Assembly (NCBI GenBank): GCA_965235115.1
Contig: OZ249445.1
Coordinates: 10,044,001 to 10,108,000 of the forward strand
Length of the DNA: 64,000 bases
Direction: 5' to 3'
Origin: Laetmonice hystrix
Taxonomy: Eukaryota
In this document: in pieces, positions 39,057 to 61,692 of the stretch
Numbering within the stretch: position 1 is the first letter of the stretch
How the letters are laid out: every line of letters starts with the position of its first letter
The notes under the pieces: generated by a model
What the model was told of the DNA's origin: nothing
Seen by the model: the letters and a program-made list of their open reading frames with translations, nothing else
Databases searched by the model: none
Translations under genes and position numbers: made by a program

Positions 39057-42000
39057 TCATGATTTCACCTTAAATGCACCAGCTGTAGACAGCGATTCTT
39101 TTAATTCCTGGAACAACTGGAAGAAGAAAAGAAACAAAATACTTAATTAAAAATCGGAAAATGGCAAGAAAGATTTTGTGTTCATTATCGCTCATTCCAG
39201 CCTAGCCTTACCAACGTTTATCAAGCCAGAATCTACTCATTTCAACAATCTGCACAGAATTCATTGATCAACCTGAATGTACCAGTCTCTAGTGTCTAGC
39301 CCATATACACAATATGATTTATGTTTTCTATATTCGATAGTTTAACTGCGACGAACTTGCCTTTTTGACCCAATCACGATTCTGGAGACATTGATCGAGT
39401 ATGTCTCGGTTCTCCACCTTATCATCTTCTTCCTTAAGTGCTGTCACCTAGCGGAGAACAATAGAATTATAATCCTGTTGAGCTACCATTTCTACACGAC
39501 AGAAACGTTCTTATGAACCATTATATTTCAAGTTTGTGACGATGCTTAAAACCCTTCCAACTGATTGTCTATTCCACTCGTGATAATTTTTCTTTAAATT
39601 TTGAAGTTAATTACCAGTTCTTTTTGGGAAACACTATGGGTCAATGTATATATTTGGGGGTGGGGGGGGGGGGGGCATACCTTTGATGAACACCGCAGGT
39701 ACAGGTTGTACCGGAAATGATAGAGCCCATGGTAGGTTGGCAGGTGAACCATCACTTCCTTGCCGACATCATATTGCTGCAAACACACCACACAACAGTT
39801 TGTTACAAAGAAATTAAGAAGGGAGACAAAAAACTAGATACATTGAGCAAATCTATGAAACTTGATGGCATTCTGTTTTCCCCAATTATTCGCATTACTT
39901 TAAGTGCATTACGACCGAGTTATCCTTGGACTTCATACAGGACCACAGTTGGAAATCCTGGCGTGCGTACCTGCTGGTGTACGGTTTGCTCGATAGAGGG
40001 CGCCTCCAGCGTGTCACGGTCGTAGAAATTGCCGCTGAGCGTCACCTGTTTGAAGACAGGCACCTTGGTGGTCGTGCCAGCCTGGCAGAATACATCCGGC
40101 TGTGATCGGTCAACTACGCTCAGCTCCGGGAACTGCTCCACGTCTTTCTGTAACACACAGCCGGTCCAAACCAGGTTTAAATACGTCCGCTTAACTCGTC
40201 ACCTTGTGCTTGTCCTTGGTGAGCCAAACCCTAATACCTCTATTGTCAATGTAAACCGAGGTCAAAGTATGATGACCTTTCAAAGTTCTAACAATTCACA
40301 AGGGCATACAACCAAAAGGCCCCGGAAATTAAATGTGTGTGGGGGTGGGGATGGATTGCAAAACTACCTCGATCTTTCTTAAATTTGCTACTATTGGCAA
40401 TGAAGCAAAGCGTTTGCTCACACAGTCAGATGGAGGTGTTCGGGAGCTGAAAACATTCCCGAACCACAATTTAAGACAAAAATGCTATGGCTAAAGCTGA
40501 TGTCAAGCCAGAACCAAGGAATTAAATCACGTGCCACACTTGCGTTTCTTGAACGTCCCTGAACGACTAAAACAATGAATCCTTTTTAAGGATAACACAA
40601 AAGAGAATCTGTGCAGGTCGGAAGAGCAGACCCCCCCCCCCCCCCTCACCCCCACCCCACACCCTTGACTCCAGCTGTAGAACTTAAGCCGGGGATCCTG
40701 AGTGATGTCAGCGCGGTGGGTAGGAGTTGGACTGACAGCTCGACAGGTCTCTGGTTTATGCCTGGAGCAACCAGTACCAGCGTCAGGCCAGGCTGTCGGT
40801 GAGCACTGAAAGGACACGGACCCGTCAACAGCCCGCAGGATTGTATGGGCAAACCCACACGACAAGCCTGTAACATTGCCACAAACCCACACCCTAGAGA
40901 CCCACAATACTGGCTTACTGTAATACATAGGCACAGATCTATACTGCCAGAGGCATTATGTAAACACATACCTTCACTACAGACTCCCATTTAGGAACTG
41001 ACTTACCCAACAACCAATGAACCGTGTTTGACGGCATTTTGTAGTGAAACAATATGAAAAAGACCGTCCATTTGAAAACGTACCCGTATCATTAAAAGGT
41101 AGCCAGCAGTTTTCGAAACCAATACTCGTATTCAGTTCGGCAATAGGTCATTTGTACCGGTCGGTAACTTCCTTTAACTGGTTAAATTAGAGAACGGGTT
41201 ATGTCTTAAAATATATTCACGGGAAAATGACGACGACGATGAAAACAATGAACACCCGGATTGCAAACGTTGGACAGAGTGGACCGACTGCATCTCCCGG
41301 CCTCTCAACAACGCCAGAGATTGTCAGTCAAAAATATATGAAAGACAAAAATTATATACATGTGTATATGAAAAATAAGAAATATATAACATTCCTCGAC
41401 CTTCCAACTGCGATAAGAATGCCGTATAATACGGCGTTTACATTTCACAAACGTCAACTACTGCAGATGTTAATTGATAATGGCTGCTGGCGTAATGACC
41501 AAGTTTACAAACACACGGTGGTGACTGAGTGACGGCGGCAATGACCGGTGTACACACACTCAGACACCACATCTAATACTTCTCCTCGCAATCCGATATT
41601 ATAAGCCTGGAGCTAAGATCCCAGTTATAAACTCACATTTTCAACCCGAGGTCCTTTCCTTCCATGGGACCGAAAATCATGGAAATGAGCTAAAATCTTG
41701 TCACCACTTTCTCTGTTATGACTGAAAAGGTAAGATGGGCTTTGATTCTGAAAAGCGCCGTCTGTGCACAAGTGACTACATGTATGCTCAAACTATCAGC
41801 AGGTTTCAAGATTCCATCTGTATTTGTCTCTTTCAGAACTGAGTCAGAGTGGCAGATCAGAAGGTGTAGTCTTGAAATGGTGTCTATTTGAAGGCCACCA
41901 TGTATGCCTACTGATTTATAGTCATTACTACTTCATACAAGGGGTACCAGTATCTGAGCCACGTGGGCTGCTGAAGATATAAACCATCCATTAATGTAAT

Positions 42001-45000
42001 TTACTCAATTTCTGTAATGTCCTGGTATTACGGCCTTTTTTTGCCAGTCAGTCTCAAAATAAGGCTCCCTTTTCTGGCGGCAGGTGCCAATAAAATGACA
42101 CTGTGGAGTAGGGCTGATAGCTTTCACTGACAAGGTAGATCTTGCTGCTCCGAAAGGAAGTCTTTTTCAATAAATCTTTTAGTACAGAATCTATTTCATA
42201 TTGCCATGATTATGGCTGAACGGCTCCAGACTGTGGGTGTTGGGTTTAGTGGATGGGACGTGCACGATCCCAAATTATTCTGGGTATCATGTTATATTGG
42301 AAGTTAAGCACTAACCCTGGGGTTGCTGTTTGCTTAGTCAGGCTAGCTTGTCAGAGTCACTTCCAATAACATACATATCACTGGAACTCCTCTGCCCCCA
42401 AGTAACCCCCAACATGAGCGTCGACTGAGAAGCATCCCCATGCCTACCTCAAAGACAGACTGATTTGAATGCATGGAAACCTGAGTAGTTTCATGAGCTC
42501 TCGAGTGGGAGTGGAAGGGTAACGCGGCCTCAGCCACTTGTGTGGTTTGTCTTGTCCAGCGGTCACAAGTCATTCAGGCTTGTTGATCTACCCAAGGCCT
42601 TTGACTACCTTAACATCACCTCCCGACTTTACCGAATTATTCTGTCAGCATAGCAATTTTTGTTTTTGTTGTTTTTTTCTTAGAAATTGTCTCTAAACGA
42701 AACAAAATACTCGGAAGAATGGTTGCCACTTTATGGTTATTAACCTTTTAGTTCAGTTAGCTCTTATTACAATGCATATGAGGAAAATGGCATGAATGTC
42801 TTCACTAACTGTTAAGAGAAATGCAACAAAATGGGATATTTTTCTTACTGCTGACAGATCTTGAATGAACCTGGGTGAAAAGAAAATTCCATTGAACGTT
42901 TTACGGACAAACTAGGGTCAGCCAAACCCAGATATCCACTTGAAAGATGTGAGCCGATGATACCGTCAAGTTGACAAAGATCTAGTTTCTGAAACCTGAC
43001 CTCCGGACTCAAGTCGGAGGGACAGACGGCCTGGCACACACGTGGCTCCAGCGACTGGACGTTAGCTTTTTCAAGCCCAGTCCACGTCCTGACTGTAACA
43101 TAAATAAGAAACAAATGGCCTCCAACATTCAGCCCTAGCTTATCGCCTCAATCTGCCGTGTTTACCCCTTTGTTTATCGGGAGGGGATTTGGCGATCGCC
43201 CATTGTACAGGTACGGCAGTCGCTAGCCACTCAAAGTCAGTGCTGACATGACAAATATGGACAAACGGTGACGGCCCCAAGACAGAGGCGACATCTCAGG
43301 TTCATTCAGACCAGCTCTATCATTGTTAGCTGCGCGACTTCTGACAGTCTACGTGGACGGCGGTGGACGGCTACTTTGCTCTGCACAGATTTTCAGGTCC
43401 TTATCCCTCTTCAAAACTCTTCTCGTAAACTAGGCAATATTTGGTCAAACCGGCACTCTTTGACCACTGCTGTCTAATCTGACAGCTCGCGAACCAAAGA
43501 AGGAATGAAGGTGATATTGGTAGCAATGAAACCTGATCATGTTTGAGTTCGTCAGATTTTCTTCCATGTCATTAGAGGTGGCCACCTTCCAACTTCTCAG
43601 TCGGACTCTGCAATGCTTGTCTTCAGCTAAATTCAACCCGGACCCCCCTCAGTCCCCCATGGATGGGCTTCACCCATTCTGAAATCACAGGGGTGTTAGG
43701 GTTAGAGCTTTTAGGAGAAAAAATCCCATAAATGCTCGGAGCTGGATAGTTTGCCCAAACGTTCTCGGTCCAGCATACAGATACCAGGCGTGCCGCAGTC
43801 AGTTCCTGGCTCCTTCTGCTTCTCTTGGTCCTGGAAATCTCTGAGGAGTTTTTCTAACCAACCACTCACACGTGGAAACTATTAAGCAGTCACTCAATGA
43901 TAGAGCAGAAAAGAGCAAGCCAGGAACAAAACGTCTAACTGCCTATTTCCCTCCTTGTGCACGGCAGTGGTGCGGGGGCTGAGCGGTGGTTGGTGTGGGA
44001 GAGAGCGACGACATCGGCGGTTTACTCTGACTGTTTCTCCTACCTGGCAGACAATATCTCACCTCGCCTTCTCCTGGTGGTACCTGTCTCCGTAACAACT
44101 AAAACCTGATTCTCAAACTTTAACTTAAACCATGCCTACTTACAAAATGGCAGGCTGGCATTCACCATCGTTTGTTTTACAACTAGCGATCGTCTTCGCG
44201 ATCTGGATGTGTACGGCAAGCAAACCCTCCAAGCAATCCTGCAGCTACACCTTCACCGTGCAGCACTCGGATGTGGCAGCAATGTGTGGAAAGGACAACA
44301 CAAAAAATGAAAATCTTGTGGATTACCTACTCCAGGGTAGTGGCCAAGGTCAAGGTCATCGTCACAGAAAACATCACCAGCAGCAGCAATTGAGAATGAT
44401 GGGAGATGAAGGTGTCTCAGAACGGGAGATTGTGGGCAAACTTCTCCTCACAGTCAATAAACTCTTACAGCATCAAAATGTTCTGGAGAACGTTAAAACC
44501 GCACATCTCGGGATCAAGGACCTCAAGAATGAAATGCATGATCAAAAAGATGACTACGATATTTTGGTTGAGAGGATAACCGCGCTAGAAAACCATCTCC
44601 AACTCTTGACTTCAGGCAAGATTCTCCTCGACCAGCAGGAAGCAAAGACCGGACTTTTCAGGCATTTTACCGGCCGATCAAGTAGATTTCTTGGTAAGGT
44701 CCAATAGTTTATATAATTCTCTCATCTCACTAAGTCTTGCACACATTGCATATACATTGCATATACCCCAGTAATGTAAAATGTGCTTTCAGTTATCCCT
44801 TGTTAAACTCCTTTAATTACCAAACTCAGGATCTGACTTCAGTTCATCCACAAAAACCTTAGTAAGCCAATAACAAACTATCGCCTGAACCTTTGTTACA
44901 AAATCTGATAGAAAGGCGTGGCTCCCACAAGCCAATCTCTTCAGATATATTTTCCTTGTGCCAATCAGCTTAACAGAGTTGATGGGAATATCTTAATCTT

Positions 45001-48000
45001 TCCATCAACAATCCAGCAAACTCTTCCTTTTAACTATTATAATGTTCAGTGTTCGCAGTAATAACGGGGTTTTCATATAACGGGGTGTGAAGCCCAAACT
45101 TCAAAGAGGCACATGACGTATATCCACTGACTATGTCAATGATTAGATTCGCAAAATAAACATTTCTCGCCCCCCCCCCCCAAAAAAAAATAAGTTCTTA
45201 GTCCTTCAGAAATATCAGGACTACGACTAGGTTTTTTTTTTTTTTTTTTTTTTTTTGGGGGGGGGGGGGGGGGGTCGGTTTACTGTTACTGTTAGATATA
45301 CTTTATGTGCCTATTAAACGTAAATGAAAACGACAGACTGAGAACGACAGAACCTAATATCAAACCCAAATATTTTTTGATTTTCCCGATTGTCAATGAA
45401 ACATGTGAGTAGTCTCCCCATGTTTGGACATTGAAAATGTTACAATTAGCCTATTAGCAGCCACGTGTTAGTAGTGTTTTCAAATCCTGCGCACAGTGAG
45501 GGTCTGCGGGGTTGGCGTGTCTGACGCTGTTTCCAATCCAGTGACTATGTCCGTTCCACCCCGCCCAGGCTCGTCAGGAATAGTGTCATCACAACCATCC
45601 ACCACGTGCCTTCCCAAACCAGCGGGGCGCTCGGCCTCTCACTTATTGCTTGTTTATGGACGGGGAAAAACTTGGCATCACCTAAAGGCACCTCAGAATA
45701 GTCTGCGGCTGTGTGATGTGGCACCTCTTGTTCCTAGTGGCGCGTTAACTTTTCACTTTTCCTTTAAACACACGTTAAAATTTTTCTTAATAAAAATCCT
45801 GAAGGAGGATATCTTGTTTCTGCAATAATATGAAATTTGACAATCAAAGAATGACAGAATGTGATAAAACCAAAGAAACTGACATAACCGTATTTTACAC
45901 CTCCTTCTGTAGGCGACTATTGGTTTGAGTATTTACTAACGAATAGATATCATGCTGAATTTGACGGATATATGACAGGACTATCTGGGATATATTCCTG
46001 GTACCGGTTGGCAAGGCGAGAATGGATGGCTCTGGATAACAAAAACGAGAACACTTGCCAGGCTGTCTCAACAACAAGCCTGAAATCCTGGTGAAATATC
46101 ATACTATGCCTGGCCACATATGTAATCAGCTTCACATGGATGACTCAGCGACTTACTCCCCCCTTTGGAACCTGAACTCAGATCAAACAAACAACAAATA
46201 AAAAAAGAAGCAAGAAAGAAACGACCCCTTTACAAGTTTACAGAAGGTCCTTGACATCTGATTTTTTATGCTTTCCCTCTGGCAACCTGATTCTGGATAC
46301 CCCGACAGTGTTGATTAACAGCAATGAGACTATTATATTCCTTCTATAACGAAAGAAAAGAATTGAACTCACATTCACAAAGACCACCCATAAAAGCTAC
46401 AACCTGGATTCTCGGATGACAACACAAAACGGAGAAAAACTTCCTAAAACATTTGTTAAAAGTTCTATCCCTCCACAAATTTCTCACACCTGGCATAGAA
46501 CAAGCTGCGTCTTATATTGCTTGTTCTTGTCAGTAAAAAAAGAGTCTGAACCCCAAACAGGTCTGCAAATATTTTGTAGCAAAGGCCATCGACTGAAATG
46601 CTCCCAGTCCTGTCAATTCGTTCGTGTTCACGGCCCCCTCGTCAAGATTTCTACAAACCAGAAACATTCGGTAACTGTATATATACCGTAGTGTGCTACA
46701 CTCCAGAACGCTACTCATTCAATGTCGGCCTCGGAAATATGTACATAAACTTCTAGATCCCGTCTAGGCTAGAGAAGACCCAATTCTAATATTGGATTAA
46801 GTTAACCCACCCACCTAATTAAATCAGTTTCACTCATACCAGACCGCTAACTGCTGCCACACTAAACATGTGTACAATGTAAATGACGAGTAAACGACCA
46901 GCATTTCTGGAGCTTCATTCTCAACATTTTCCATACATTCCGACGCTTCTCTTGTTCTACGACGGGTTTTGAATTTTTCTTAGAAACGACATATCATAAG
47001 TTCAGAACCTGATCAATTTACTACTAAACTATTCAAGCCGGGTAATTGTAAACGAGGCCCTCTCGAAGACATATCGGAGAGGCCCCTCCCACTGTATTAT
47101 CCCAGCAGAATTAAGAATGCAGCAGCTACTGAACACTGCTTCCAAGCCTGACGACAAAACTTCTTTTCTGACTGCTAAGCAATTTTTCATCTCAAGCTTT
47201 ATGCGAAAATAGAACTAACTGGGTCTTCGCTGAAAATTTGAGCTCTGGACGGAATGCACCCTTGCTGGTCATTTTTGCACAGAAACGCCCAGAGCAAACA
47301 TATGAAAAAAAGGTATAAAAATAGGACACATAAAGATTATGATAAAAACCAACTGACGCATAGGTTCTCAGGACTTCAGTTTTTGTTACCTCCAGGTGGG
47401 AAAAATACCAGATTTTTTATACCCAGAGAAATGCGATATCTACGATGTTTTGTCGGGTTGTCGTCAATCTCTGGGCAGAGAGGCTTACTTTGTGATTTAG
47501 TCCCCCCCCCCCCCCCAGCTACATTTCCAAAACTGTTCACGACAGAAGGCAATGTTAACATATTAATGCACAAGTAAATAGCCTGGGATCGGAGAGTAGA
47601 GAGGCGTGTCGGAGATGGACATGACAGGAAGAACATCCGGATACACAAGGTAATGATGGAAGACTCCCGAGATGGCAGGAAAGATCAGAACAGCTGGTGA
47701 CAATGGTAGTCACAACGTGAAAACATCCTCAGGAGATGGAAAAGTTTTTAAAAAGTGATCAGAAAATGTGTTCATTACCTCATTTAATTTTCATTTTGTG
47801 CTTGAATGACCTTTTGTGATTGAGTTCACGTGTAACCCAGGGTTAGCCGACCTCAACATGTCAAGTTGAGACCACCACCATTTCAGAGAGATGCCACACG
47901 ACAAACATGCAGTTTACATCCAAGATAGATCTATATGTGTGCCCCAACCAAAAAACCGCCGGCATCATCATCAGTTCACTCTAGGACCCGTCAACCACTG

Positions 48001-51000
48001 GCGCCGCCGGGTTGGGCCACGTGGCCCGACCATAAAGTTGACGGTGCCGCCCAGCCTGTTGTGCCATATCAGCAGCGCGTTCCCAGCACCGGCACCACTA
48101 CCCCACCGCCAGGCGTCTCTCCAAGCGTCACCCCATGATAATTTACGGCACGGCCCACCTGTGCCGTGTCCTCACTTCTTCAGATTAACAGCGAATGAAA
48201 GGGGCACAAGAGGCCGCCCGGCTTGGCCAGCACGGGTTTGGGATCAGACATTGAGGGTTCTTGAGGCATTTGGCTCCTAGTGGCTTCCACTAAATCAGCC
48301 CTACCTGCCAAGTCTGTAATAACATCCTTAGGTGAGAATTTGTGGTCATTGCCACAAATCTTAAGCTTAATTTCTCTTTGGGTCACGATAGGACTTCAAC
48401 AGGAAAGATAGAGTTCGAGTAATGCTCGCCGTCTCCTGATTTGATGTTCAGTCAGGATTTTCTCACAAAAGAAACTTTCACTTAACTGTACTAAAGTTCT
48501 GATCGCGGTACTTGCCGCAAATATTCATTTCTCACATTGCCAAAGAAAGCGCGAAATCTGCGACTTTATTTTAGACTTACTTATCTTTTTGATTCTAGGT
48601 CAGTTTCCTTTTACCCCTGTAAAAGAAATAGCAGGGAAAAAGTCCCACAAAAAAACTACCTCCGTTCCAAGCCCAGCAGGGTGTCGTGACCGACAAACTG
48701 TTGTCAGAGTGCCATGTTATACACATGCTATACGGCGTTACGGCACCTGTTACACATGCTTCGTGCACAGATTGTGTTTCCATGGAGATATTCCCGCACT
48801 TGACTACCTCTCAGACCTGCTGGAACCCCCATTGTCAGAGGAACAACTTACATTGGTTAGGTTTACTCTGGTACCATCGTGCTCAACGTGGGCGACTTGA
48901 CAACCTCAGCCAACCCTATCCTGTCTATTAAACTAAACTTTTATGGTACAACTCCCAACTTCCCATCCTCCATAACCACAAATCTCACCCATCACACCCC
49001 GCGACGGCGCAAGAAAATATTCGGCGGGATAACTCTGTATGGATGACGTCTGATGTCATAGACAGTATTTAAACAAGTTCAACTTCTTACAGCACAAAAT
49101 ATACAAACGTACTGGATTACTTGAAACAACAACGTCCACCCCCACCTTCCCTCACCCCCCCCCCCCCCACACACACACACTTAAAAAAAAATCAAACAAC
49201 GCGCATGAACATAATCATTATAGCCCTTACATATACCAAGAAACTTTTACAGAATTTTAGCGTCTAAATGTTTAAGTAATCTTCATACGTCCAAAATTAC
49301 ATCATGTCGGTCTCCAATCATCAGCCACGCTGTTTTCAGGGACATGGTTATTTCAATCATTGCCAACATAGATTTGTTTCTAACCACAGTAACTCTAACA
49401 TTAGTTGTTGGGCCTAATGCACCGGTTTGTGTATGCCTGGCAAGCTTTGAAGTCTTTTAGATTGGTAGCTTCCAGTCTGACTCATCTCAAAACATTAAGC
49501 ATTTAAAGATTTTGTCAGCCTCCCCTTCTATGTGAGACGGCGAGAGAAACGCTTCCTGACAGGCACGGCTCTCTGTCATCTGACCTGGTTAGAGGTGACC
49601 TGACCCCAGCGGCCTGGACCTCACCCCAGGTCAAAGGTCAGCAGGCTCTACGGGGGTCAGGCATCATATCTGTCAGGGGCATCACGGGGGATCATATATA
49701 ACTGCCGTTGAATGGGGGGAAAGGACCAATACCTATCCGTCAGGGAATTTTACCCAAATTATCTACATTCTCATCATTTTGGGTGCATCTCTCAGCTGTG
49801 AACTGTAAACAGTCATGTCTAATCGTCATCTCTGCTTGAATCATAAACCACTCCAGAGGTTTCAGGTTGGCGGAAGCTAATCATATATCCCACCCGAGGA
49901 TGTCAACCGAGGGTTCAGGTTGTTGCACATAATGACATGAACAGAAAGGTACCAGTAAAACTGTCTAACCATCTCCTTGTAACATGGCTATCATGAGTTT
50001 AATCTTTCTTCACCTTCAGACTGCCCTGTCAACAATGGCCGCAGGATTCATGAGATGGCACCGATCAAAACCAAATACAACGAACTCATCCGAGTTGGTA
50101 TGTATCATTGTAATAAGGTGCTTCTCAAATTTATATTTCCAGACTGTTACTTCGTTATATATTCACCATGAACAAATGCTGAATAGTCTGCCTGTAAATT
50201 TTACATTACTTGCGGGTCCAACTGAAATGGGGGATGGGGGGTCCCAACCATAATTAGTCAATCATTTAGATCTATTTAGTTATTTAATTATCTATTAATT
50301 ATCTTTTTTGGAAGGGGGGGGGGGTCCAGGCAACTCGTAACTCCCCCTGTGGCTACATCATTGATTCGGACAAAATGACCCTGTCTACCATCAGCGGCAT
50401 GGGCCACACGGTCGAGACGCGGCAGCGCCTGCTGGCGGAAATTTTGATAACTATGCTATGGCATGGGCATGGCCGAATTCGCCAAAACAATTGTTAATAT
50501 GGGATTAGTTAGAGATTCTCTTACAATCTGTAACGCTAATAAAATATTATGATCATTTCACACTTTGATACCTTATCCCTGCTTGATATGATAGTTTCTG
50601 TGTCTGTTTATGTTTCTGACGGTCCGCCATTAGCTAGCCTACGCTTTGACAGCCGACTGTAGCGCCATAGGCGGCCACTGATGGCACTGAATAGGGTGCT
50701 GTCATCAATCGTTTTTACTCTGAACTAATATTGAGTTCCAAATCAAAACGATAGATGGCAGTACCCTTTTCCGTGCCCTCTAGCGGGAATTATGGAACTA
50801 ATCACGATTCATCAGCACCGGTGGAGCTTCGCTTTGGTTCGGCACTTCAAACGTTCATAGCGACGAACGAAATAATGCTTATCGCGTGTCAAGAGGGAGT
50901 TAAGAAGTCAAAGGTTGAATGATGATTGGATTTCCTGCAGATTCTAAGTGAATTGTCAAAGAATTCGTGTCGAACGTGTGTTGATGTAAATTGATTTCAG

Positions 51001-54000
51001 CTTTCAAGGTTTCACAAAAGTGCCGCCAGTAGGCGCTGGTGTGGATTGACCGTTTCGAGAATGGGTGGCGCGTTGGTGTATTGTGGGCGGGGCCTCCGGC
51101 CGTGGGGAAATAACACCACCACCAACGCAAGGGGTCACTCAGTAAAACGGGGGCATAAAATGTATTTGATTTTTTAGAAAATTTAAATCTGGGGAAGTGA
51201 GTGAGGAATGTGGCGGGGCGCACATAATCCCACAAGGGCGGATTTAGAGGGGGCGAGGGGGCCGCGCCTCCCCCACTTTCGTCGGGTGCCAATCAGAAAA
51301 AAACGCAAAATTTTGTTGTTTGCAACTGTAAAAGCAAACATTTTGCTTTCTCAGAATGCAGGAAATGCCATTTCACAGACTCTATAGGCCTAAATGTTCC
51401 AAAATTGTCCCCCTTTTCCAACCGCCCCCCCCCCCTTTTCCTAAATCCTGGATCCGCCCCTGCTTGGTATTCTTGAAGGTATTGTGTTTTCCCCAAAATA
51501 TTCCACCCTTTTAATAGTTTTATTGGTATATTTGACTGCAATTCAACAGGGAGATGTTTAAAACAATAAGAAATCGCTTTATGCTACACTGTTTGTAGTT
51601 CCCCGCTCCTGCAGTGAGTGGCGTAAAGGCGGCTTTACCCAGAAAGGTATGTACCTAATTGACCCTGACGGGATGGAGGACACGGCGCCATTCTCAGTGG
51701 AGTGTGACATGAAGCAGGATGAGGCGGCCGCCATCATCCACCACGACCAGGAGAAACGGTCACAGGTCAAAGGACACGAGGACTCGGGCAGTTACAACGT
51801 ACCCGTCACATACAAGGGTATATATCCTCCATCATATTTCTCGTGTAACCAGGAAGAAAAAGTCATATCAGAAACTTACAATAACACTTAAAATCCTGTT
51901 GCTAGTTTTTCACTTTTAGGGCTCAGGTTTTGACAAATTATAACATTGATTGCATTTATAACTGGCTGTAGGTGTCAGCAGAGAGCAACTGGCGTCACTG
52001 ACTTCCAACTCCTACCGCTGTACTCAGTTCCTCAAGTGGGAATGTAAGGGTGCGGCGATATCCCGGGAAACATGGTGGGTGAATGCTCATGGTGAGGCCA
52101 TGCCGTACTGGGCGGGAGGCAAAGTACGCGGGTGTGCTTGTCTACAAAACAACACCTGCCAGGGAGGTAAGTTCACCAAATCACCACCAGTCGTTGTAAA
52201 TTGCTCCAAATTGTTTCAACAGGAGAACAGTATATCCGCATCAAAACATGAATTGCAAGACAAATTTATTAATTTACTTACGTTAGCCAGTTATTATTAG
52301 TCTAGGTAACATGCTAGAGTGGAATTGGTTTGGACTCTCAACTCTTACTCCCTGCTACTGTTTAGGTAACTTGTGTAACTGTGACGCCAACTCGGACACC
52401 AAGTGGACGTCCGACGCTGGGTTCATCTCGGAGAAGGAGGACCTCCCAGTGAGCAGGCTCCAGTTTGGTGACACTGGGAGCTCCCTGGAGGAAGGCTACT
52501 TCACGCTCGGACCTCTCTACTGTTTCTCCAGTAAGATACACTACTCATCCTTACTTCTCACAGCAGGTTTCACAGCCCATGGTGACTGCTCACAGCTAGG
52601 GCAAATTGTGTTATCCTTACTTCTCACAGCAGGTTTCACAGCCCATGGTGACTGCTCACAGCTATGGCAAATTGTGTGTTTTGGCTACCAAGACATTGTA
52701 CCAGAGGCACGCTACTCTGGGTGTGGCACTGGACACATTTGATTTGTCCTTACTTCAAACAATATGACTGAACGTTTTATGATAGTGAAATTGTGAAGAT
52801 GCCTGGAAATAGTTTGGACTGTTTGCCATCTTGTATTCCAGGTTAAATCCACATGTACATGTCATTTCAATAGCCTAAACAATTGGCCCTTGAATCTGAT
52901 TATTTCAACCATATTTAGAATGGAATCCATTGTTCTTCAGACAAGACGAACCCATATGAAACAAGCAATGCCTTCATGCCAGTGGAGATCTACCCACCAT
53001 TTAACGTCTTCTGTGACCTGGAAGGATGGATTGTGATTGCTCGCCGTAATGCAGGAAGCTCACTCACATTTGACCGTGACTGGAGCGAGTATCGGAATGG
53101 CTTTGGCAAACTGGAGGATGAGTTCTGGCTTGGCCTTGAAAAACTACATCACCTAACTGGCCAGGACAAGAGCTACACATTACAGGTACACTTTTCTATC
53201 CACTAGTAACCTCCAGGTGCCAGTTCATTAAGTCGTGATATTATGCACAGTGCAATCCCCTACATGTGATGACAGATATAATCCCTATAATATCATCTGT
53301 AAATTTCTCTTCCTTCTAGATGTCGTTTGCCTCAGGAAAGGGCATCAGATACTATGCACAGTACACTCACTTCCACGTGTCAAGTGAAACCGATGGCTAC
53401 CGTCTGTACATTGGACACTACACGGGGACCATCATTGACGCACTCTCGGCAGCCTACGGTCAACTATTCTCAACCCGCGACAAGGACCAGGACCAGTGGA
53501 ATGATGGCTCATGTGCCAAGCACGCACAGGTGCCCCCTCCCGGCGGATGGTGGTACACAGACTGTGGCAAAGTTTTCTTGTTTGGTGAGAAAATCATCTG
53601 GGGTGCCATTGATGATATGAAGTACGTGGAAATGAAGATTAAACCGATGGCATGAGTGTCACATTCTAGGAGGACGAATTCTAACCTGGAGAATCAGTTA
53701 CACCTAGTATGATAGTGACTAAAACACAGACTGTCCTAGTCCTGTCTTGTTTGTGCCACTTAGATAGGCGTTTAGGAGGATTATGCTAATTCCATGTGCA
53801 TAGTTTTTTTTTGTATTGTTAGCATGTTGTTGTAAATATGGAAAAATAAAGTTAATGACTTTTAGATTTCAATAAATTCTGCATTTTGTTTCCTCCAATT
53901 TTAAATTTCAAATATACATGTACTATTTATCTTTTAGAATCAGCGAATGTTAGTGGTTTTAAAAAGTAAAAGTGAACAACCTACAACTTAATTTTCATCA

Positions 54001-57000
54001 ACATGACGAAGCTGGATTGGTTATCCTGCAGAACGTCCAAATTACCACTCTTCTTCACTGTACCCAGTGAAACCAAAATACTTTTAATATATAGATCTGG
54101 GATTTTAAAAAGACGTATCATGTGGCAGTGGTCTCGTATTGAGACAAGCTAGGATAGGTACACACTGCTCACCGGCGCCCTCTTGCGGAGACGAGTAGGG
54201 TTAATCCCCCTAGTGGACAAATCTCGTACTATATATCCCTCAGACGGTTTAATGCACTTTATTTCCTTTCCAAAAACCTTACGCAGACTAAAGATTCGGC
54301 TAACATTGCACAAATATGCACTTATATATATACCATTCTCTGCAAGTTCCAATACTAGCATGCGTCATACTAATATTGCAAATATATATAATAAAGGGCC
54401 TAGATATGCACACAATGAAAGTCACTACTGTTCAACAATGTTCAACAATGGAGTGACCATTAAATTTCTTACCACACAAGATTTTAAAACAGACCTAGAA
54501 TAACTGCATCACTGGAAAACGGCCCATGCAGAATCAGGATTAAAAGCATTTTATCATTTTTTAAAAGAAACATTCACTGAACGCTTCCACCGCTGGGTTG
54601 AGTCTAAGATTTGTCTTGCTAGGTCTTACCTGAAAGCTATTCGTCCAGTTGATGAGATTTGCAATGATCTTTGCATGATCTGCGATGATATTGTCCAATT
54701 GTTGTAGGGGGCCATGGTAGTAGTCATCTGAAATCATGATTCAAATTTCACTCTGGAATGAAACTCCATAAATAATGGAACTAAAAGTTAAAAGATCAAG
54801 TCACTACCAATACACACACACACATCATCCTGTGTCTTACCTTTCTCTTCATTAATAGCAGCTAAAAATCCAGGTTCCAGAGCCTGGCTGATGAGAATTT
54901 GTATATAGACCATGAAGGCAGACATCAGTTCATCTTCTTCTTCGGGGCTGAGAAAAAAAAGAGAAAAGAAAATTCTTACATCTGCCAATCATTTTTCCTC
55001 TGAAAACTTTAGAGATGCATCTGATTTTTTTTACCCATGCTACTTCTGCACCCACCTCTCCTCGACTGGTCTGGGTCGGAACTCCTCTAGCACCTCAACC
55101 TGCTCCAGTGTCCCGCGACCAGAATAGAAGATGCGAACCTTGATTGCCCGGAACTGATGTCGTGCACTATCAGACCAGCTCGAGTACTGTAAATACAAAT
55201 AATACACTGTTTTCCGAACCTTTTATTTTTGTACATAAATCAGCCCAGAATAATAAATGTTTCCTCAAAAGTATATTTGCATATGTTTAAAGAAAGTTAA
55301 AAATCCAGAATATTTGCTAAAATAAAATTATTTTGTAGCTTGCTGTATTTTCCCCTCATAATGGACACTACTAAATATATTGCGCTCACCGTGGACAAGG
55401 CCTGGTGCAATATACGACCATCCTTATTTATTAACTCAAACTTCTGTAGTAGGCGTCCAGCGTCAATCTTCCAGATAGGATACGAGTCGTAATTTTTTAA
55501 GTCCTTCTTTTCCAAGACAAATTCGCCCTTCTGTATTGAAAATAATTTAAAACATGTCACAAAGCTTTTGCATATTTTTCAAATGAGGTCTTTCAACAAC
55601 TTTGTCTGGTTTTACCTGAGAGGGTGGCACAACAAGACTCCTCCAGTACTGCACTGCACTCTGCACACAACCTCAGCTGTAATGTAATCTGCCATACATC
55701 ACAGCCAATAGCAGTACTGTAGACAAGAATGCACTGATTCAGTATCGACACAAGGAATTCTCCCTGTTCTCTTACATTCCCTGACAGTTCTGTCACAGGA
55801 ATATTTGACGACTTACCAAGATAATGGAAAGCATGATTTGAGCAAAACTTACTGTGAACTTGTGAACTGGTTCTTCTTCATCATCTGAGGGTAGGTGGAC
55901 AGGTTCTGGTACAGGATCATTGACCAGGTCATCAGCAGTTGTTCTGGCCTCTGTTTGAGGGGTTAAGGGCGCACCCCGGTACACTGTCTGAACACCACGG
56001 CCCCTCAATGAAGAGCGACCCCGGCTACAAATTCAAATTTATAATGTCACACACATTACCACAGGTTAAAGTTTTCAGGAACCTAAGACGAAAGATTCAT
56101 TCTTATAAACATTAAATACTATGGCTTCCATTACACAAAGTATCAGTATCAAACACAATGCTGATTAATTCTTACTTAAATCTTGGGGTAGTGACACGGA
56201 ATTTCTTCCCCCGTCCTCCAAGTGCTCTCCGACTACCATCTTCATCATCAGAATCCACTCGTCCCGTCACTATGTCTGGCTGAAGTACAAATATATTGTG
56301 TGAGATAACACTACAGCTAGGAACACAGTTCTAACTTACAGTAATACCATGCTACAGATGTTATATCTGTCACCGGTTAACAATCTTTCATATTTTCTGA
56401 GTGAAGTCTTGATCACCGTCTATTGTCAACTCTGATTTTCTTTTTTCATAGAACACTTGATGACAAGGGCACCCTTACCAAAGCTGTTGGTCTCCATGCA
56501 GGGTCTTTGTCCGAATCATAATCCTTTTCCTCAGGTTCATCTTCTTCACTAGACAGAGACACGAAATCTTCTATACCAGATCCAGAGCCTCCTCCCTTAC
56601 TATGTCGCTGTTTCTCTAAAACCACATTGTTTCAGTAGAATAAAATATGTCGCCATCCAGCAGAGACTTCAAAATGACACTATGACCATGTCTTAGTGGG
56701 CATCTCCTTAAGTTCTGACATTCTGGATTTCAAATGTGTCATGTTCAATCTGATTTACCTGTACATTTCAGATTTTTCTTAGATTTTTACTTCCCAAAAA
56801 ACTTTAGTCTTTGGTAAAGTTGAGGTATAACTCATGAAACCTGCTCATCCTTCATTGAACTTCAGTTACCCCACAAAGCAATTTTATTGCCACATTAAAT
56901 CATTCTGATAATATGGTCTTAATCTTTCAAGCCTGACAGTGACAACAGACTGAAAGAACCATCTTGGAATCTATGAAACAATCCCCCCTTCCCCAACAGA

Positions 57001-60000
57001 CATTATGGCCATATGGTGTTCCAAAATAGGTATTCATTTTCTTGAAAAATCAAAAGAAAACAGACTTCCCGTATTTCCAATCCTCACAAATGCCTACCCA
57101 AAAACAAAATGCATCCTTTACCAAACGTAATAAGATGGAAATATCTTGTACACTATGTTTAATAGGGCTAACAGATCATCTTAAGACAAAAGGTCAGGTG
57201 CCAGTAACTGTTTTTGTGCATAGTGAATGATAATGTGTTAAAATGGAGAGATTGCAGCCAATTAAGGTAGGTTTTCCTTCCTCCTACAAACCTGTCTGCC
57301 AACTAACCTTTTCTGCCTTCTGGTGTTTTTTCTAAAACCAAAACAGATACTTAGGTTCAGCATTTATGTTATACATGCTGCAGCCCGCATGCTCAGCCCT
57401 TCGTCAGAACAGTGCAGAAACTACAGAATGAAGTTTAAAACTTCTAAGCCACAATATATAATAAGGGTTGTATCAGGGAAAACACTGACCAAAAATCAGT
57501 TCATTTTAATAAAAGCTGAAAAGATATGTTTTGACAGAGGGGAAACAAATAATGTTATGTTGTCCTCAGAACTAAACCAAGCCAAGTCTCCATGCTGTGT
57601 GCCAGTAAGCATCTCTTCATAAAATAACTTTTGAGTGTACAGACATCCACGCTGATTCACATAGAATGAGACGTCCTTCATTGTCATGTTTTAAAAAATG
57701 GTCTTTGTGTTGGAAGGGTGTAGAATATGCATATATATGCTTTATAAAAAAAAATTGTTAGTGTGACAGTGGTTGCAATTTTGTGGGGCTGCAAGTAGCT
57801 AGCTCATAATGATAATTGACTCACTCCTGGCTTGTCTCTCCTTTCGCTTCTCCTCGACCTTGACCTTGGCTTGCCGAGATGTCCTCTCCCTAAGTGGAAG
57901 TGGGGATGGTGCCTTTCTCTTGGGTACAGGCTGTGGTATATATAGTGGCAATGCTAGTTAAATATGCAAAGCCTACCTATGATACATAAATTAATGCTCC
58001 ACATTGTTTGACAAGACAATTGCTCAGGACAACTACATCAATAGAAAATGAAGATTGTGAAAACATAATTTATTAACCTTTGACTTGACGACCTCATCAC
58101 CACTGCCTTCTGGATTAAAATCATCATCTTCAGGATCCAAACTTGCTTTCCTTTTCTTAATACCAGTGACACGACCCCGCCCTCGACTCTTCCCTCTACC
58201 TCGTCCACGACGAACGACTAGCATTGGTATAGAGTCCAAAGTGGCAGAACTACTGCTGTCTTCACCACTTAGATTAGAGATGACATTTCTAAGGGCCTCC
58301 TTCATGTTTCCTTGCGTGTCTTCATCATCAGAGAATGCCACAGGCTCATCAATTTTAGAAGAACTTTTGATTAAGCCTTCTTCCCCCTTGGACACCTTTT
58401 CCCGGTCTTTTGTACTGAATGGAAAAACAGGGCGGGGATCGGGGACATACTTTGGCATTGGAGGTCTTGGAGTGTTACTGTTTGTTACACTAGAAAGAGT
58501 TTCTGGTTTTTTCCCCTGTAAAAAGCTGAGGAAAGAGTTCTGGAAGGCACTGGTTGACGTGGGCTGGACTGGTTCAGACTCAGATATATTTGCATCATTG
58601 TTTTGTTTACTGTTTGTGATTATTGGTGGTTCAACTAGGTGAGCAAATTCATCGTCAATCTCAGTTGGCCTTGGCATAGTGGGCATAACTTTCTGTTGTG
58701 CCTTGGTTCGACGAGATTTGGGTTTCGTTTCCATGTAATCCATAGGGTCAGGCTTGGGGTCGGACCCGGGTACTGTCCCAAGGGCTGTATTGGGATTTAC
58801 AAATGCATTCCCAAATGTGTTTGTCATAAAGACTTGGTCGGCAGCAAGCACATCTTTTGTTGCCATAACAGAGTCAGACGATGTATAATCCAGGGTTGAG
58901 GTTGTAGGGGAACTGAACGTTTGGCATGTTGGGACATCAGAGAACTGTGGATCAGGGATGTGGCCTGCAGCTGACCCTTGGACCGGAAAAATGGGGTTGA
59001 TAGCTGGAGGAGCCTGCTCGTGTTGGTAAAGTTGGTCTTGGGGAAGCGTTACCACTGGTCCTGGAGCCTGCTGGCTCACCTCAAATGTTGTAGGTGTCAT
59101 GTGCTCCAGGCCTGCGACTGTGTTTTTGTCTTTGCGTTTGCGTGTCCGCCGCTTGGGTCTGGTGGTTGAGTCTGGTACAGCCTGGACTGGGATTGGTGTT
59201 GGCTGAACAGTAGAACTGGAATGTTGTGGACTACCCAGAGATATCCCCACCTGGAGGACAAACACACACGTTTTTCACTCCACCTATCTCAAGGAACAAC
59301 TCTAACTATTAGGAGATTTAGCTTGATCTTGTCTCAGCTAATAAGATCTATTTCGCAAAGATAATATTCATGATATATATATGGGCGTACATAAAAACTT
59401 AAAACTCTAAGGTATCCTGTTGACTCTTAAATCTGACCTAGAGTTGGCGTAAATGTGCACAATACCTGTGGACTGCCGACACTGACAGGTGATTGTTGCG
59501 GCATTGGATTGAGCCGAGTCATTGAGCCCGGCTCTGACATTGGACCAACTATGTGACTGCCTTGTGGCGACCTCATGTGGCCATGAGGGCTTGTTAGTCT
59601 TGACTGACGCTCCTGCAATCAACACCAAATTAACCGAAAGCAATGATATGTAAAAACATTAGATGCTGGTCTTTTTGATTTTAACATAATGAGCTTCACT
59701 TTTGGGTAAAATTCCCTTACTAGACTTGAATTAAATCAATTTAGCTTTAAAAATACACTGTGGGATACCAAAATGGCACACTTCTGCTGTAAAATTTGGC
59801 CAACTTAAAATAATTAAGACAGCCATGCTACAATTCATGGCAATATTTGATATGCTTCATGTTTTGTAGGTGTCAAAACTAATAGTCTAACAACCCTTCA
59901 TGGGCCAAATGAGATAGACAACGTACCTGCAAGGGTAGTTTCTCCTGGTTGGAGCTGATGTCTGCAAGGTCCTGTAGGGACATGGCTGTGTTGAAAGAGT

Positions 60001-60322
60001 CATTTGTCTGTGAGTCAGGGATTGGGGCTGCAGGACTCACTGCCTCGTAACTCATGGAGCTGGTGCCATCCTGGCCTCCCATTTTGGTGGTGCTCACATA
60101 GGTGGTGGTTCCCATGGCTGGGCTATAGCTACAACAGATATTCCAGGTTATCAAAGTATGCACAATATTACAGACAGCTGCACCTGGCTATCAGATATCT
60201 CAAAGCTCTCTCAAAGCAACCCTTAAGTGGTACCTGAATGGGCTGTGGCCATGTGGCGCCTGTTGGGATTGCTGTGCCAACTGTGGTGAGCTGGGATAGC
60301 TTTGATGGTTGGTAATACGTGA

Positions 60323-60407
<85 letters not shown>

Positions 60408-61692
60408 TGATGCTGACTGCTCACTGGTCGACCACCCTCATTATGATCATAGGACTGAAAATATATTTCAAAAAGAAGTGAGACCAACATGTTTAAATTT
60501 AATACCTAATCATAATGCAAAATTGCAACATTCTTGACACATACACTGACAATACTGCTGATAATACGCAAAATATTCAACGATGATGAAATTTAAATTA
60601 TATCTCTAACGTAATCACAATATTAAGACACTGAAATAATACATCCAATGTCCTAAATTCAGACATGAAGGAGATCTGAAATACCTACTGTGTAGTGAGA
60701 GTGTGCTGTTGGTGGCTCACGTTCTGTACTGACTGGAGGGCTGTAGGTGGTTTGATTACTACGATTGCCTCCAGAGTGCGCTGGTTGAAGGGTCTGTGAG
60801 TATTCCTTGTACGGGTTGCGTTGAATGGTACTTGCCCTGTGTCCCGTCTGGGAGCCTGAGTGAGCTGGTGGAGGCTCAATACTTGGGGTGAATCCAGTAC
60901 TGGTCACGTGGTCACCAACATACTGAATCCCTGGCACTGTTGTCACGGGCACAAAACTAGTTAGGCCCCATGCCTTTGCAGTGTCATTGAAAATGGAAGT
61001 TGGTGACGGAGTGGTTGTGTAGGATGGCACCAGGTCCTTAGCCACATGAGAATCAGTGAAAGACAAGGCTTTGCTGATTGCTGCCGGTGATGCTGTCATG
61101 GACAGCCGCCCCTCCTGTAGTTTGTTTGGAGACTCAAGGGTATATGCCGGTTGACCAACAGTAACTGTTTTATAGGGTGACTGCTGCGAGGTTGCCAGAG
61201 AGGTTACAGAATCAAGGAACTGTGACATGGTCCCCAGCGCTGGATGGGTATAGTTCATCGTAGGTATTCCAGCAATTGGACGTGGTGGGGAAAGCGTTGT
61301 GTGGGCTGGCAGTGGTGGGGACAATGCCCCAAGGCCTGCAAAGGGACACAAAAACTCTGCTTTCAATATTCAAACTGTGATTAGTACTTGCAGTGTTAGG
61401 ATCATCTTTGCTTTGTTTTCTACACCCCCAAAAAAGCACCTTCTCTACTTCAGCCATCTACTTTTCCCACCACCGTTATCAAGATTATTAATACTCCTCA
61501 ATTTACAGTGGAGCAACACACTCATTTTGCATTTGATACTGGAGCCAACTACTTCTACCTTTAATTACCTTGGCTTGCTAACGTTGATTGGTCAAGCAAT
61601 GAGAGGTCAATCCTAGGGTTTGTGGTCATTCCCGGACCTGAACTCAGACGACTATAAGCCTGGTTGTAGGTATTCCAATGGTTAGGATCCAT
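39057..61692 (-). CDS. QSER1: QSER1/PRR12-family chromatin protein, 17 coding exons, ~1260 aa (polyQ, AT-hook-like RGRG, DUF4211-like C-terminus)
   Basis: Exons in transcript order: 61692-61569, 61335-60689, 60454-60234, 60128-59927, 59250-58078, 57930-57825, 56615-56479, 56279-56176, 56024-55853, 55530-55390, 55186-55056, 54947-54841, 54727-54630, 40147-39971, 39776-39681, 39447-39361, 39116-39057. Total 3783 nt, phase-consistent. Motifs recalled from the family: FQNSFLSFLQG, FMVYIQILISQALEPGFL, FPEL..SGNFYDRDTL..YHGLYHFRYNLYLRC..QCLQNRDWVKKLF. The symbol indicates family membership; orthology was not tested. Confidence 0.82.
44132..53655 (+). CDS. Secreted fibrinogen-related protein (signal peptide, angiopoietin-like N-terminus and coiled coil, CASPR/COLFI-type module, fibrinogen C-terminal domain), 7 exons, ~599 aa
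   Basis: join(44132..44693,50020..50097,51599..51817,51972..52166,52366..52530,52941..53185,53320..53655) = 1800 nt, GT-AG and phase-consistent. Hydrophobic FVLQLAIVFAIWMC; CSYTFTV; PRSCSEW..GMYLIDPDG..VECDM; CNCDA..LPVSRLQFGDTG..TLGPLYC; FDRDWSEYRNGFG..EFWLGLEKLH; FSTRDKDQD..GGWWYTDC. AATAAA signals at about 53845 and 53871. Confidence 0.9.
49581..49660. promoter_or_regulatory. Nuclear-receptor half-site cluster including a perfect DR1
   Basis: AGGTCA-A-AGGTCA at 49628-49640, plus TGACCT (49581, 49596), TGACCC (49601), GGACCT (49616) and GGGTCA (49654). Confidence 0.4.
50214..50363 (-). mobile_element. MITE family A, copy 2 (truncated, inverted relative to 8715-8907)
   Basis: The reverse complement begins CAATGATGTAGCCACAGGGGG and shares the AT-rich core and the TCAGTTGGACCC segment with copy 1. 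Confidence 0.7.
51233..51462. mobile_element. MITE with CAAGGGCGGAT / ATCCGCCCCTG ends (hAT-like)
   Basis: TIR CAAGGGCGGATTTAG / CAGGGGCGGATCCAG (reverse complement). No TSD is visible. Lies in intron 2 of the nested gene. Confidence 0.65.
52547..52678. repeat. 66-bp tandem duplication in an intron
   Basis: ATCCTTACTTCTCACAGCAGGTTTCACAGCCCATGGTGACTGCTCACAGCTA(G/T)GGCAAATTGTG.. starts at 52547 and 52613. Confidence 0.9.
60323..60409 (-). repeat. Coding CAG repeat: (CAG)26 pure, Q29 in total
   Basis: Plus-strand CTG x26 at 60326-60403, flanked by TTG/CTG codons, in frame in exon 60454-60234. Confidence 0.95.

What the first reader, a model, noticed from the sequence alone, without database searches (positions are those of the whole stretch)
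40148..54629. Whole 7-exon gene nested antisense in a 14.5-kb intron that splits the conserved QSER1-type C-terminal region
The host's other coding introns are under about 1.3 kb, but this one is 14,482 bp and contains the complete fibrinogen-related gene on the opposite strand. The host frame joins in phase 0 (...WTNSFQ | KDVEQFPEL...). Without the join, both halves look like truncated genes. Inference: this arrangement allows transcriptional interference or mutually exclusive expression between a housekeeping chromatin gene and a secreted immune or matrix gene.
Basis: partly seen in the sequence, partly recalled or inferred. Interest (0 to 1): 0.7.

Follow-up and report, generated by a model that had tools for sequence, protein, structure and literature searches.

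The report
Conserved gene nested inside another gene
A complete gene for a secreted fibrinogen-like protein lies backwards inside the one long intron of a QSER1-type nuclear-protein gene, and at least three other distantly related invertebrates keep the same layout, so this is a real, old but otherwise ordinary nested gene.

Summary

- **Host gene.** The minus-strand host is a single-copy QSER1/PRR12-family gene with 19 coding exons and 1317 aa. Intron 15 (40148-54629, 14,482 bp, GT..AG, phase 0) cuts the DUF4211 domain. The other 17 introns are 105-692 bp.
- **The join is real.** The spliced protein aligns without a gap at the junction to full-length mollusc orthologues (E about 1e-77). Two of these come from cDNA-like contigs.
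- **Nested gene.** The intron holds one complete, single-copy fibrinogen-related gene on the plus strand. It has 7 coding exons (44132-53655), encodes 599 aa, and has poly(A) signals about 200 bp after the stop.
- **Conservation.** Three other species' contigs show the same nesting, with introns of 3.7-6.1 kb, and a fourth shows it partly. A bivalve contig and one further species have a roughly 1-kb intron at the same position and no nested gene.
- **Age.** The nesting species are more divergent from one another than mollusc classes are, so the arrangement is old.
- **Assembly.** DNA contigs bridge the acceptor edge.
- **Function.** No RNA data exist, so transcriptional interference or mutually exclusive expression remains untested.

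This is a new example of a well-known kind. The scan has first-reader notes of other nested antisense genes in this genome; it has not recorded this pair on other DNA.

The parts
39057..61692 (-). Coding span of the host QSER1/PRR12-family gene: 19 coding exons, 1317 aa
   Evidence: Hand-built model giving a single open frame with all junctions in frame. All introns are GT-AG except a GC donor at intron 18. The protein aligns almost end to end (to residue 1307 of 1317) with named mollusc orthologues that carry PF13926. It is single copy in the genome.
54630..54727 (-). Host exon 15, the last exon before the long intron; it ends ...WTNSFQ
   Evidence: Acceptor ag and donor gt; the exon enters in phase 1 and ends in phase 0. 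Orthologous exons with the same boundaries occur in L002, L003, L004, L006, L007 and L008.
40148..54629 (-). Host intron 15: 14,482 bp, phase 0, inside the DUF4211 domain
   Evidence: GT..AG. Pfam DUF4211 positions 27-55 map to exon 14 and positions 92-137 to exon 16. The 33-codon exon 15 fits the 36-position gap between them. The other host introns are 105-692 bp.
39971..40147 (-). Host exon 16, the first exon after the long intron; it starts KDVEQFPEL
   Evidence: PF13926 positions 92-137, E 2.5e-5. It aligns gaplessly after exon 15 to cDNA-derived and annotated orthologues. DNA contigs from three runs bridge 40147/40148.
39057..39776 (-). Host exons 17-19 (39681-39776, 39361-39447, 39057-39116) and the stop codon
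   Evidence: They join in frame. Intron 18 has a GC donor. The junctions match orthologue alignments.
44132..44693 (+). Nested gene exon 1: start codon, signal-peptide-like hydrophobic N-terminus, coiled-coil stalk
   Evidence: ORF and donor gt. Homologous first exons lie on the opposite strand inside the intron in L002, L003 and L004.
50020..50097 (+). Nested gene exon 2 (26 codons)
   Evidence: Found by tblastx conservation in all three relatives. It has ag..gt boundaries and keeps phase 1.
51599..52530 (+). Nested gene exons 3-5 (51599-51817, 51972-52166, 52366-52530): the first, atypical fibrinogen-A/CASPR-like module
   Evidence: They join in frame. They are 45-64% identical to the relatives. 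Pfam gave no hit at E<=1 for the two ORFs that cover exons 3 and 5.
52941..53655 (+). Nested gene exons 6-7 (52941-53185, 53320-53655) with stop codon: fibrinogen C-terminal domain
   Evidence: PF00147 Fibrinogen_C at E 3.3e-19 and 7e-14. They are 41-48% identical to the relatives over about 190 aa.
53845..53876 (+). Two AATAAA poly(A) signals of the nested gene, about 750 bp before host exon 15
   Evidence: Pattern scan and the sequence itself. Whether they are used is not shown.

Best explanation
This is an evolutionarily old host/nested gene pair.

**What is there.** A single-copy QSER1/PRR12-family gene on the minus strand has a phase-0 intron inside its C-terminal DUF4211 domain. That intron contains a complete, single-copy, independently transcribed gene for a secreted fibrinogen-related protein on the opposite strand.

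**How the host makes its protein.** RNA polymerase must read through the whole nested gene, and the spliceosome must remove 14.5 kb, joining 54630 to 40147.

**Why the intron is long.** The nested gene accounts for its outlier length. It spans 9.5 kb of the 14.5 kb, and species without it have an intron of about 1 kb at the same position.

**History.** The nesting arose once in the common ancestor of the window species and the L002/L003/L004/L006 group. These are non-mollusc invertebrates, probably annelids. The gene has stayed there since, because it sits inside an essential intron.

**Shown versus inferred.**
- Shown: the gene structures, the join (by homology), the conservation and the copy number.
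- Inferred: independent transcription of the nested gene, a single origin, and the age.
- Untested: any regulatory coupling between the two genes.
For: **Splice sites, phase and single open frame:**

**DUF4211 is colinear across the intron.** Exon 14 matches profile positions 27-55 and exon 16 matches 92-137. In orthologues the domain scores 66-70 bits, and the junction maps inside it.

[quoted passage not shown] The same holds for two cDNA-like Logan contig products, P0020 and P0027.

**The nested gene is complete and is a fibrinogen-related gene:**

**The same nesting occurs elsewhere.** L002, L003 and L004 have identical host intron position and phase, with the orthologous nested gene on the opposite strand. 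Their introns are 6072, 4189 and 3726 bp. L006 shows the donor-side adjacency.

**Species without the nested gene.** The intron is 964 bp in L008, which falls in the bivalve clade, and 1111 bp in L007. Neither holds a nested gene.

**Divergence.** The tree path from the window to L002-L004 is 1.16-1.21, against 0.66-0.83 between mollusc classes.

**Copy number.** Both genes are single copy and the intron's non-coding DNA is unique.

**Assembly.** Contigs bridge the acceptor edge.
Against: - No RNA evidence exists for this organism. Use of the junction, the nested gene's transcript ends and the expression of either gene are unobserved.
- UTR exons of the nested gene could lie outside the intron.
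- The species behind L002-L008 are unnamed, so the age rests on branch lengths with unknown rates.
- The exon 16 match in L007 is weak (E 0.014-0.2). L007 sits on a long branch next to the window, so a loss in that lineage is implied rather than shown.
- CpG depletion covers only the host's 5' 7 kb (observed/expected 0.37). The intron (0.65) and the 3' exons (0.75) lack it. I cannot explain this, and it could mean the two parts differ in their germline chromatin or transcription history.
Confidence: 0.88

Rival explanations
1. The nesting is functional. Antisense transcription of the fibrinogen-related gene interferes with host elongation or splicing. The two genes would then be expressed in a mutually exclusive way, or the host would produce a DUF4211-truncated isoform when the nested gene is on.
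For: - The arrangement is kept in lineages more divergent than mollusc classes.
- In L002-L004 the nested stop codon lies only 92-152 bp from the host exon-15 donor, with no canonical poly(A) signal in between. The nested transcript there probably overlaps host exon 15 in antisense.
- Interference between nested genes is documented in Drosophila and at mouse H13/Mcts2 (PMC5174743; PMC13309782, abstract).
Against: - There are no expression data at all.
- Conservation is expected even without function, because a gene inside an essential intron is hard to remove.
- L007 apparently lost the nested gene and kept the host.
- In the window the nested gene has its own poly(A) signals about 750 bp before host exon 15.
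- By its title and abstract, a mammalian study finds no expression divergence (PMC8467205).
Confidence: 0.15
2. The two host halves are separate or decayed gene fragments, brought next to a fibrinogen gene by rearrangement or misassembly. On this view the long 'intron' is not spliced.
For: The only support is the absence of RNA data and the different CpG observed/expected values of the 5' part (0.37) and the 3' part (0.75).
Against: - Both halves are intact, with conserved splice sites and phase.
- Together they reconstitute one DUF4211 domain, gaplessly against orthologues.
- Three other species' independent assemblies show the same order and orientation.
- Exon 16 has no Met, and the 5' half would be truncated after 22 intronic codons.
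- There are no Ns in the window.
- DNA contigs bridge 40147/40148 and cover 39000-44999.
Confidence: 0.02
3. The fibrinogen gene entered the same intron independently in different lineages, because a long intron is an easy landing site. On this view the nesting is not inherited.
For: In Drosophila, nested genes typically arise when young duplicates insert into long introns (PMC5174743).
Against: - The nested genes are mutual orthologues with the same unusual exon and module order.
- They share the same strand and the same tail-next-to-donor position in every species.
- The gene has no close paralogue in the genome; the best other match is 43-50% identical over one exon.
- Where the gene is absent the intron is short, about 1 kb.
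Confidence: 0.03

Closest known systems
Opposite-strand host/nested protein-coding gene pairs of animals (Drosophila, mammals, C. elegans)
   Same: One complete gene lies inside one intron of another, on the opposite strand, and the internal gene is shorter than the external one. This is the commonest form of gene overlap. About 10% of Drosophila genes are nested and 71% of those lie on opposite strands (PMC5174743). [quoted passage not shown]
   Different: - The internal gene here is not small or intron-poor. It has 7 exons and a 5.3-kb intron of its own.
- The host is otherwise a short-intron gene, whereas typical hosts have many long introns.
- The pair is old rather than a young duplicate insertion.
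QSER1 / PRR12 family (vertebrate nuclear proteins with a C-terminal DUF4211)
   Same: - A long Q/S/P-rich, low-complexity protein with a C-terminal DUF4211.
[quoted passage not shown]
- The C-terminal region is the conserved part, as in vertebrates (PMC12648955).
   Different: - This is a single invertebrate gene, so it is a pro-orthologue of both vertebrate paralogues rather than QSER1 specifically.
- At 1317 aa it is shorter than vertebrate QSER1, which is 1708 aa in zebrafish and 1864 aa in human as cited in PMC12648955.
- I know of no report of a gene nested in the vertebrate genes, and I did not test this.
Fibrinogen-related (FReD) secreted proteins such as angiopoietin-like proteins, ficolins and tenascins
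   Same: A signal-peptide-like start, a coiled-coil stalk and a C-terminal PF00147 domain.
   Different: An extra, Pfam-silent module that starts like a fibrinogen A subdomain precedes the true fibrinogen domain. This is the subject of another finding, s1-313697, and was not analysed further here.
Ancient conserved microsynteny in animal genomes (gene pairs that stay linked over long evolutionary times)
   Same: Two unrelated genes have stayed physically interlocked across very deep divergences.
   Different: No conserved non-coding elements were detected in the intron spacers. The simplest cause of retention is mechanical: the gene is inside an essential intron. A cis-regulatory cause is not needed.

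Membership tests
QSER1/PRR12 family (DUF4211 proteins) | Pfam PF13926 (DUF4211) at the C-terminus, above the curated cut-off | tested here: inconclusive
   Only single exons could be scanned by reference. Exon 16 gave 24.8 bits and exon 14 gave 14.9 bits against a cut-off of 27, with colinear profile positions 27-55 and 92-137. The spliced protein has no reference, so it was not scanned.
QSER1/PRR12 family (DUF4211 proteins) | Full-length homology to recognised family members | tested here: met
   [quoted passage not shown] It also aligns over its N-terminal, central and C-terminal regions to Octopus, Gigantopelta and Mactra proteins, and from residue 644 to 1307 to the cDNA-derived P0027. All of these carry PF13926 at 66-70 bits.
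QSER1/PRR12 family (DUF4211 proteins) | [quoted passage not shown] | not testable with these tools
   This needs experiments. It is only inferred from the family name.
Opposite-strand nested gene pair | The internal gene lies wholly within one intron of the external gene | tested here: met
   The internal coding sequence (44132-53655) and its poly(A) signals (53845, 53871) lie inside the intron 40148-54629. UTR ends are not observed.
Opposite-strand nested gene pair | Both genes are intact and maintained by selection | tested here: met
   Both have single open frames. Both are conserved with intact frames and splice sites in L002, L003 and L004.
Opposite-strand nested gene pair | The host intron is actually spliced across the internal gene, and both genes are transcribed | not testable with these tools
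   No RNA run holds this locus. Indirect support comes from cDNA-like contigs of mollusc orthologues, which join the same two exons, but those species lack the nested gene.
Fibrinogen-related proteins (nested gene) | Pfam PF00147 Fibrinogen_C above the cut-off | tested here: met
   70 and 52.6 bits for the last two exons against a cut-off of 22. The hits cover profile positions 29-97 and 102-187.
Transcriptional-interference pair | Activity of one promoter lowers or truncates the other transcript; expression is anticorrelated | not testable with these tools
   No expression data are available.

The most novel reading that the evidence does not exclude
The pair may be a functionally coupled unit that has been kept since before deep annelid-level lineages diverged. 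In three species the fibrinogen gene's stop lies about 100-150 bp from the host's exon-15 donor, with no canonical poly(A) signal between them. Its transcripts therefore probably run antisense across host exons 15 and 14. That would create a conserved sense/antisense overlap exactly where the DUF4211 domain is split. Such an overlap could switch the host between full-length and domain-truncated forms whenever the secreted protein is induced.
Probability: 0.1. Interest if true: 0.55.

Novelty: new member of a known kind. Interest (0 to 1): 0.3.

Why it matters
**For annotation.** Gene finders are likely to cut this host into two truncated genes at the 14.5-kb intron. The joined model given here restores an intact DUF4211 protein.

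**For evolution.** This is a datable nested pair. It is present in at least four deeply diverged, probably annelid, lineages. It is absent from a bivalve and from one further species that both keep a short intron at the same site. It therefore offers a natural with/without comparison for asking whether nesting affects host expression.

It does not reveal a new kind of system.

Tried and rejected
- **Exhaustive HMMER search with the 59-aa exon 16.** It returned only two spurious bacterial surface proteins.
- **ESM Atlas look-ups.** Nothing was usable for the host exon. The last nested exon gave only generic fibrinogen clusters.
- **RNA runs.** None were found. The three runs that hold the locus are DNA-like and come from one sample. 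Read laying could therefore test only assembly continuity, on the acceptor side alone, because a call is limited to 6 kb.
- **Contigs without DNA.** The contig of the closest relative (P0003, 59% identical), the contig of P0015 and the octopod contig of P0019 could not be read. The Haliotis look-up was not on record. No named genome could therefore be inspected for nesting.
- **Accession searches in papers.** Searches for the assemblies and runs found nothing, so the relatives remain unnamed.
- **Other content of the intron.** Pfam on nine further ORFs, Rfam and tRNA scans found nothing. Genome-wide DNA search found no repeat copies apart from a short simple tract.
- **Misassembly and independent insertion.** Both were considered and rejected; see the rival explanations.
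Full report
**1. The observation**

On the minus strand, exon 15 of the host ends ...TGGACGAATAGCTTTCAG|gtaagac at 54630. Exon 16 begins ttacag|AAAGACGTGGAG at 40147. I built the whole host model by hand from splice sites and frame.
- It has 19 coding exons, 3954 nt and 1317 aa, as one open frame from ATG 61692 to TGA 39057.
- Intron 15 (40148-54629) is 14,482 bp, GT..AG and phase 0.
- The other 17 introns are 105-692 bp.
- One of them, intron 18, has a GC donor.
- The window has no N.

**2. Is the join real?**

- Pfam DUF4211 (137 positions) matches exon 14 at positions 27-55 and exon 16 at positions 92-137. Exon 15, with 33 codons, fits the 36-position gap.
- Stepping through longer and longer homologues reached full-length orthologues that carry PF13926:
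  - Octopus bimaculoides XP_014781450.1.
  - Haliotis rubra, Gigantopelta aegis and Mactra antiquata.
  - Two products, P0020 (1664 aa on a 5.5-kb contig) and P0027 (1396 aa on a 4.7-kb contig). Each fills nearly its whole contig and so comes from a spliced transcript.
- The joined host C-terminus (aa 1011-1317) aligns to these at 39-46% identity and E 1e-67 to 1e-77. There is no gap at 1178|1179 or at any other predicted junction, including the GC-donor junction.
- In those orthologues DUF4211 scores 66-70 bits, and the junction maps inside it.
- Without the join, the 5' part reads 22 codons into the intron and stops. Exon 16 has no Met.

No RNA run of this organism exists in the index, so direct junction reads could not be sought.

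**3. The nested gene**

The plus strand carries a signal-peptide-like start at 44132 and a coiled-coil exon. A 26-codon exon at 50020-50097 was found only through conservation. Three exons of an atypical module follow, and then two exons of a fibrinogen C-terminal domain (PF00147, E 3e-19 and 7e-14) ending at 53655.

The seven exons join into one 599-aa frame. AATAAA signals follow at 53845 and 53871, about 750 bp before host exon 15.

Nothing else recognisable lies in the intron:
- Nine other ORFs have no Pfam match.
- Rfam and tRNA scans found nothing.
- The non-coding DNA is unique in the 627-Mb genome.

Both genes are single copy.

**4. Assembly**

DNA contigs from three runs of one sample cover 39000-44999 and bridge 40147/40148. 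They break only at a short C-rich simple tract near 40640, and another contig spans that tract. It is supported by synteny, described next.

**5. Other species**

Contigs that encode homologues of the host's large exon were fetched and searched with both proteins.

Nested gene present:
- In L002, L003 (NCBI GCA_029980185.1) and L004 the host exons appear in order.
- Exon 15 ends with the same ...FQ|GT donor in phase 0.
- The orthologous fibrinogen gene then lies complete on the opposite strand, including its first exon.
- Host exons 16-18 follow after it.
- The introns are 6072, 4189 and 3726 bp, and the nested gene fills 70-80% of each.
- L006, a 4.5-kb contig, shows exon 15 followed 270 bp later by the tail of the nested gene.

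Nested gene absent:
- L008 has the same intron position, but the intron is 964 bp.
- L007 has an intron of 1111 bp, although its exon 16 match is weak.

The length of intron 15 therefore tracks the presence and size of the nested gene.

**6. Who are these species?**

A maximum-likelihood tree of host exons 12-16 gives the following:
- Gastropods, cephalopods and bivalves form one clade with 100/100 support. L008 falls among the bivalves.
- The window, L007 and the (L002, L003, L004)+L006 group lie on the other side.
- The path from the window to L002-L004 is 1.16-1.21 changes per site. Paths between mollusc classes are 0.66-0.83.

If rates are roughly similar, the nesting is at least as old as the split of the mollusc classes. 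That split is Cambrian by established knowledge. This dating is an inference.

Other follow-up notes of this scan call the genome 'probably annelid'. I showed only that it is not a mollusc.

With molluscs as the outgroup, the simplest history is one gain in the non-mollusc lineage, or a loss in molluscs, followed by a later loss in L007.

**7. How it works**

- Shown: two intact, conserved, interlocked genes.
- Follows from standard knowledge of splicing: host pre-mRNA synthesis must pass through the nested gene, and 14.5 kb must be removed to make the DUF4211 domain.
- Untested: whether transcription of one gene disturbs the other.

Published work gives different answers. Interference-driven expression divergence is reported in Drosophila (PMC5174743). 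By their titles and abstracts, other papers report no divergence in mammals (PMC8467205), induction of host genes by nested genes in C. elegans (PMC12274878), and interference driving intronic polyadenylation at mouse H13/Mcts2 (PMC13309782).

One detail keeps a functional reading alive. In L002-L004 the nested stop is 92-152 bp from the host donor, with no canonical poly(A) signal in between. The nested 3' UTR there probably overlaps host exon 15 in antisense. In the window it need not overlap.

**8. Unexplained**

CpG observed/expected values in the window are:
- 0.37 over the host's 5' 7 kb.
- 0.65 in intron 15.
- 0.75 over the 3' exons region.
- 0.62-0.75 in the flanks.

The relatives show no such contrast.

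**9. Verdict**

Nested opposite-strand genes are common. About 10% of Drosophila genes are nested (PMC5174743), and first readers of this scan have noted several others in this same genome (unchecked). This is therefore a new, unusually old member of a known kind.

Noticed in passing
window 54630-61692 versus 39057-54629: CpG observed/expected is 0.37 across the host's 5' exons and introns. It is 0.65 in intron 15 (nested gene included) and 0.75 over the 3' exons region, the same as the flanking DNA. The relatives L002-L004 do not show this contrast. It may reflect a germline methylation domain that stops at the long intron.
   Followed up: partly
G000:C21:19194912-19327512 (own genome, outside the window): More than 40 tandem matches to the fibrinogen-A-like exon of the nested gene (35-43% identity) lie within about 130 kb. 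This looks like a large tandem array of fibrinogen-related genes.
   Followed up: no
window 51599-52530: Exons 3-5 of the nested gene encode a module that begins like a fibrinogen A subdomain. The two ORFs tested, which cover exons 3 and 5, have no Pfam match, and the module precedes the true fibrinogen domain. It is conserved at 45-64% in L002-L004. This is the subject of finding s1-313697.
   Followed up: partly
window 53186-53319 versus L002, L003, L004: The intron between the last two nested-gene exons is absent in the three relatives, where a single ORF of about 190-210 aa covers both exons. This is an intron gain or loss within the nested gene.
   Followed up: no
window 52547-52677: A 66-bp unit is tandemly duplicated (98% identity) in the fifth intron of the nested gene, just after its exon 5.
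   Followed up: no
window 39359-39360 (minus strand): Host intron 18 uses a GC donor (AAAAAG|gcaagt). Gapless orthologue alignments support the junction.
   Followed up: yes
window 60319-60430 (minus strand): An uninterrupted run of about 36 glutamine codons, mostly CAG, lies in host exon 3.
   Followed up: no
L002 14010-14122, L003 9800-9951, L004 13583-13674: In the relatives the nested gene's stop codon lies 92-152 bp from the host exon-15 donor. No AATAAA or ATTAAA lies between them, so its 3' UTR probably overlaps host exon 15 in antisense.
   Followed up: partly
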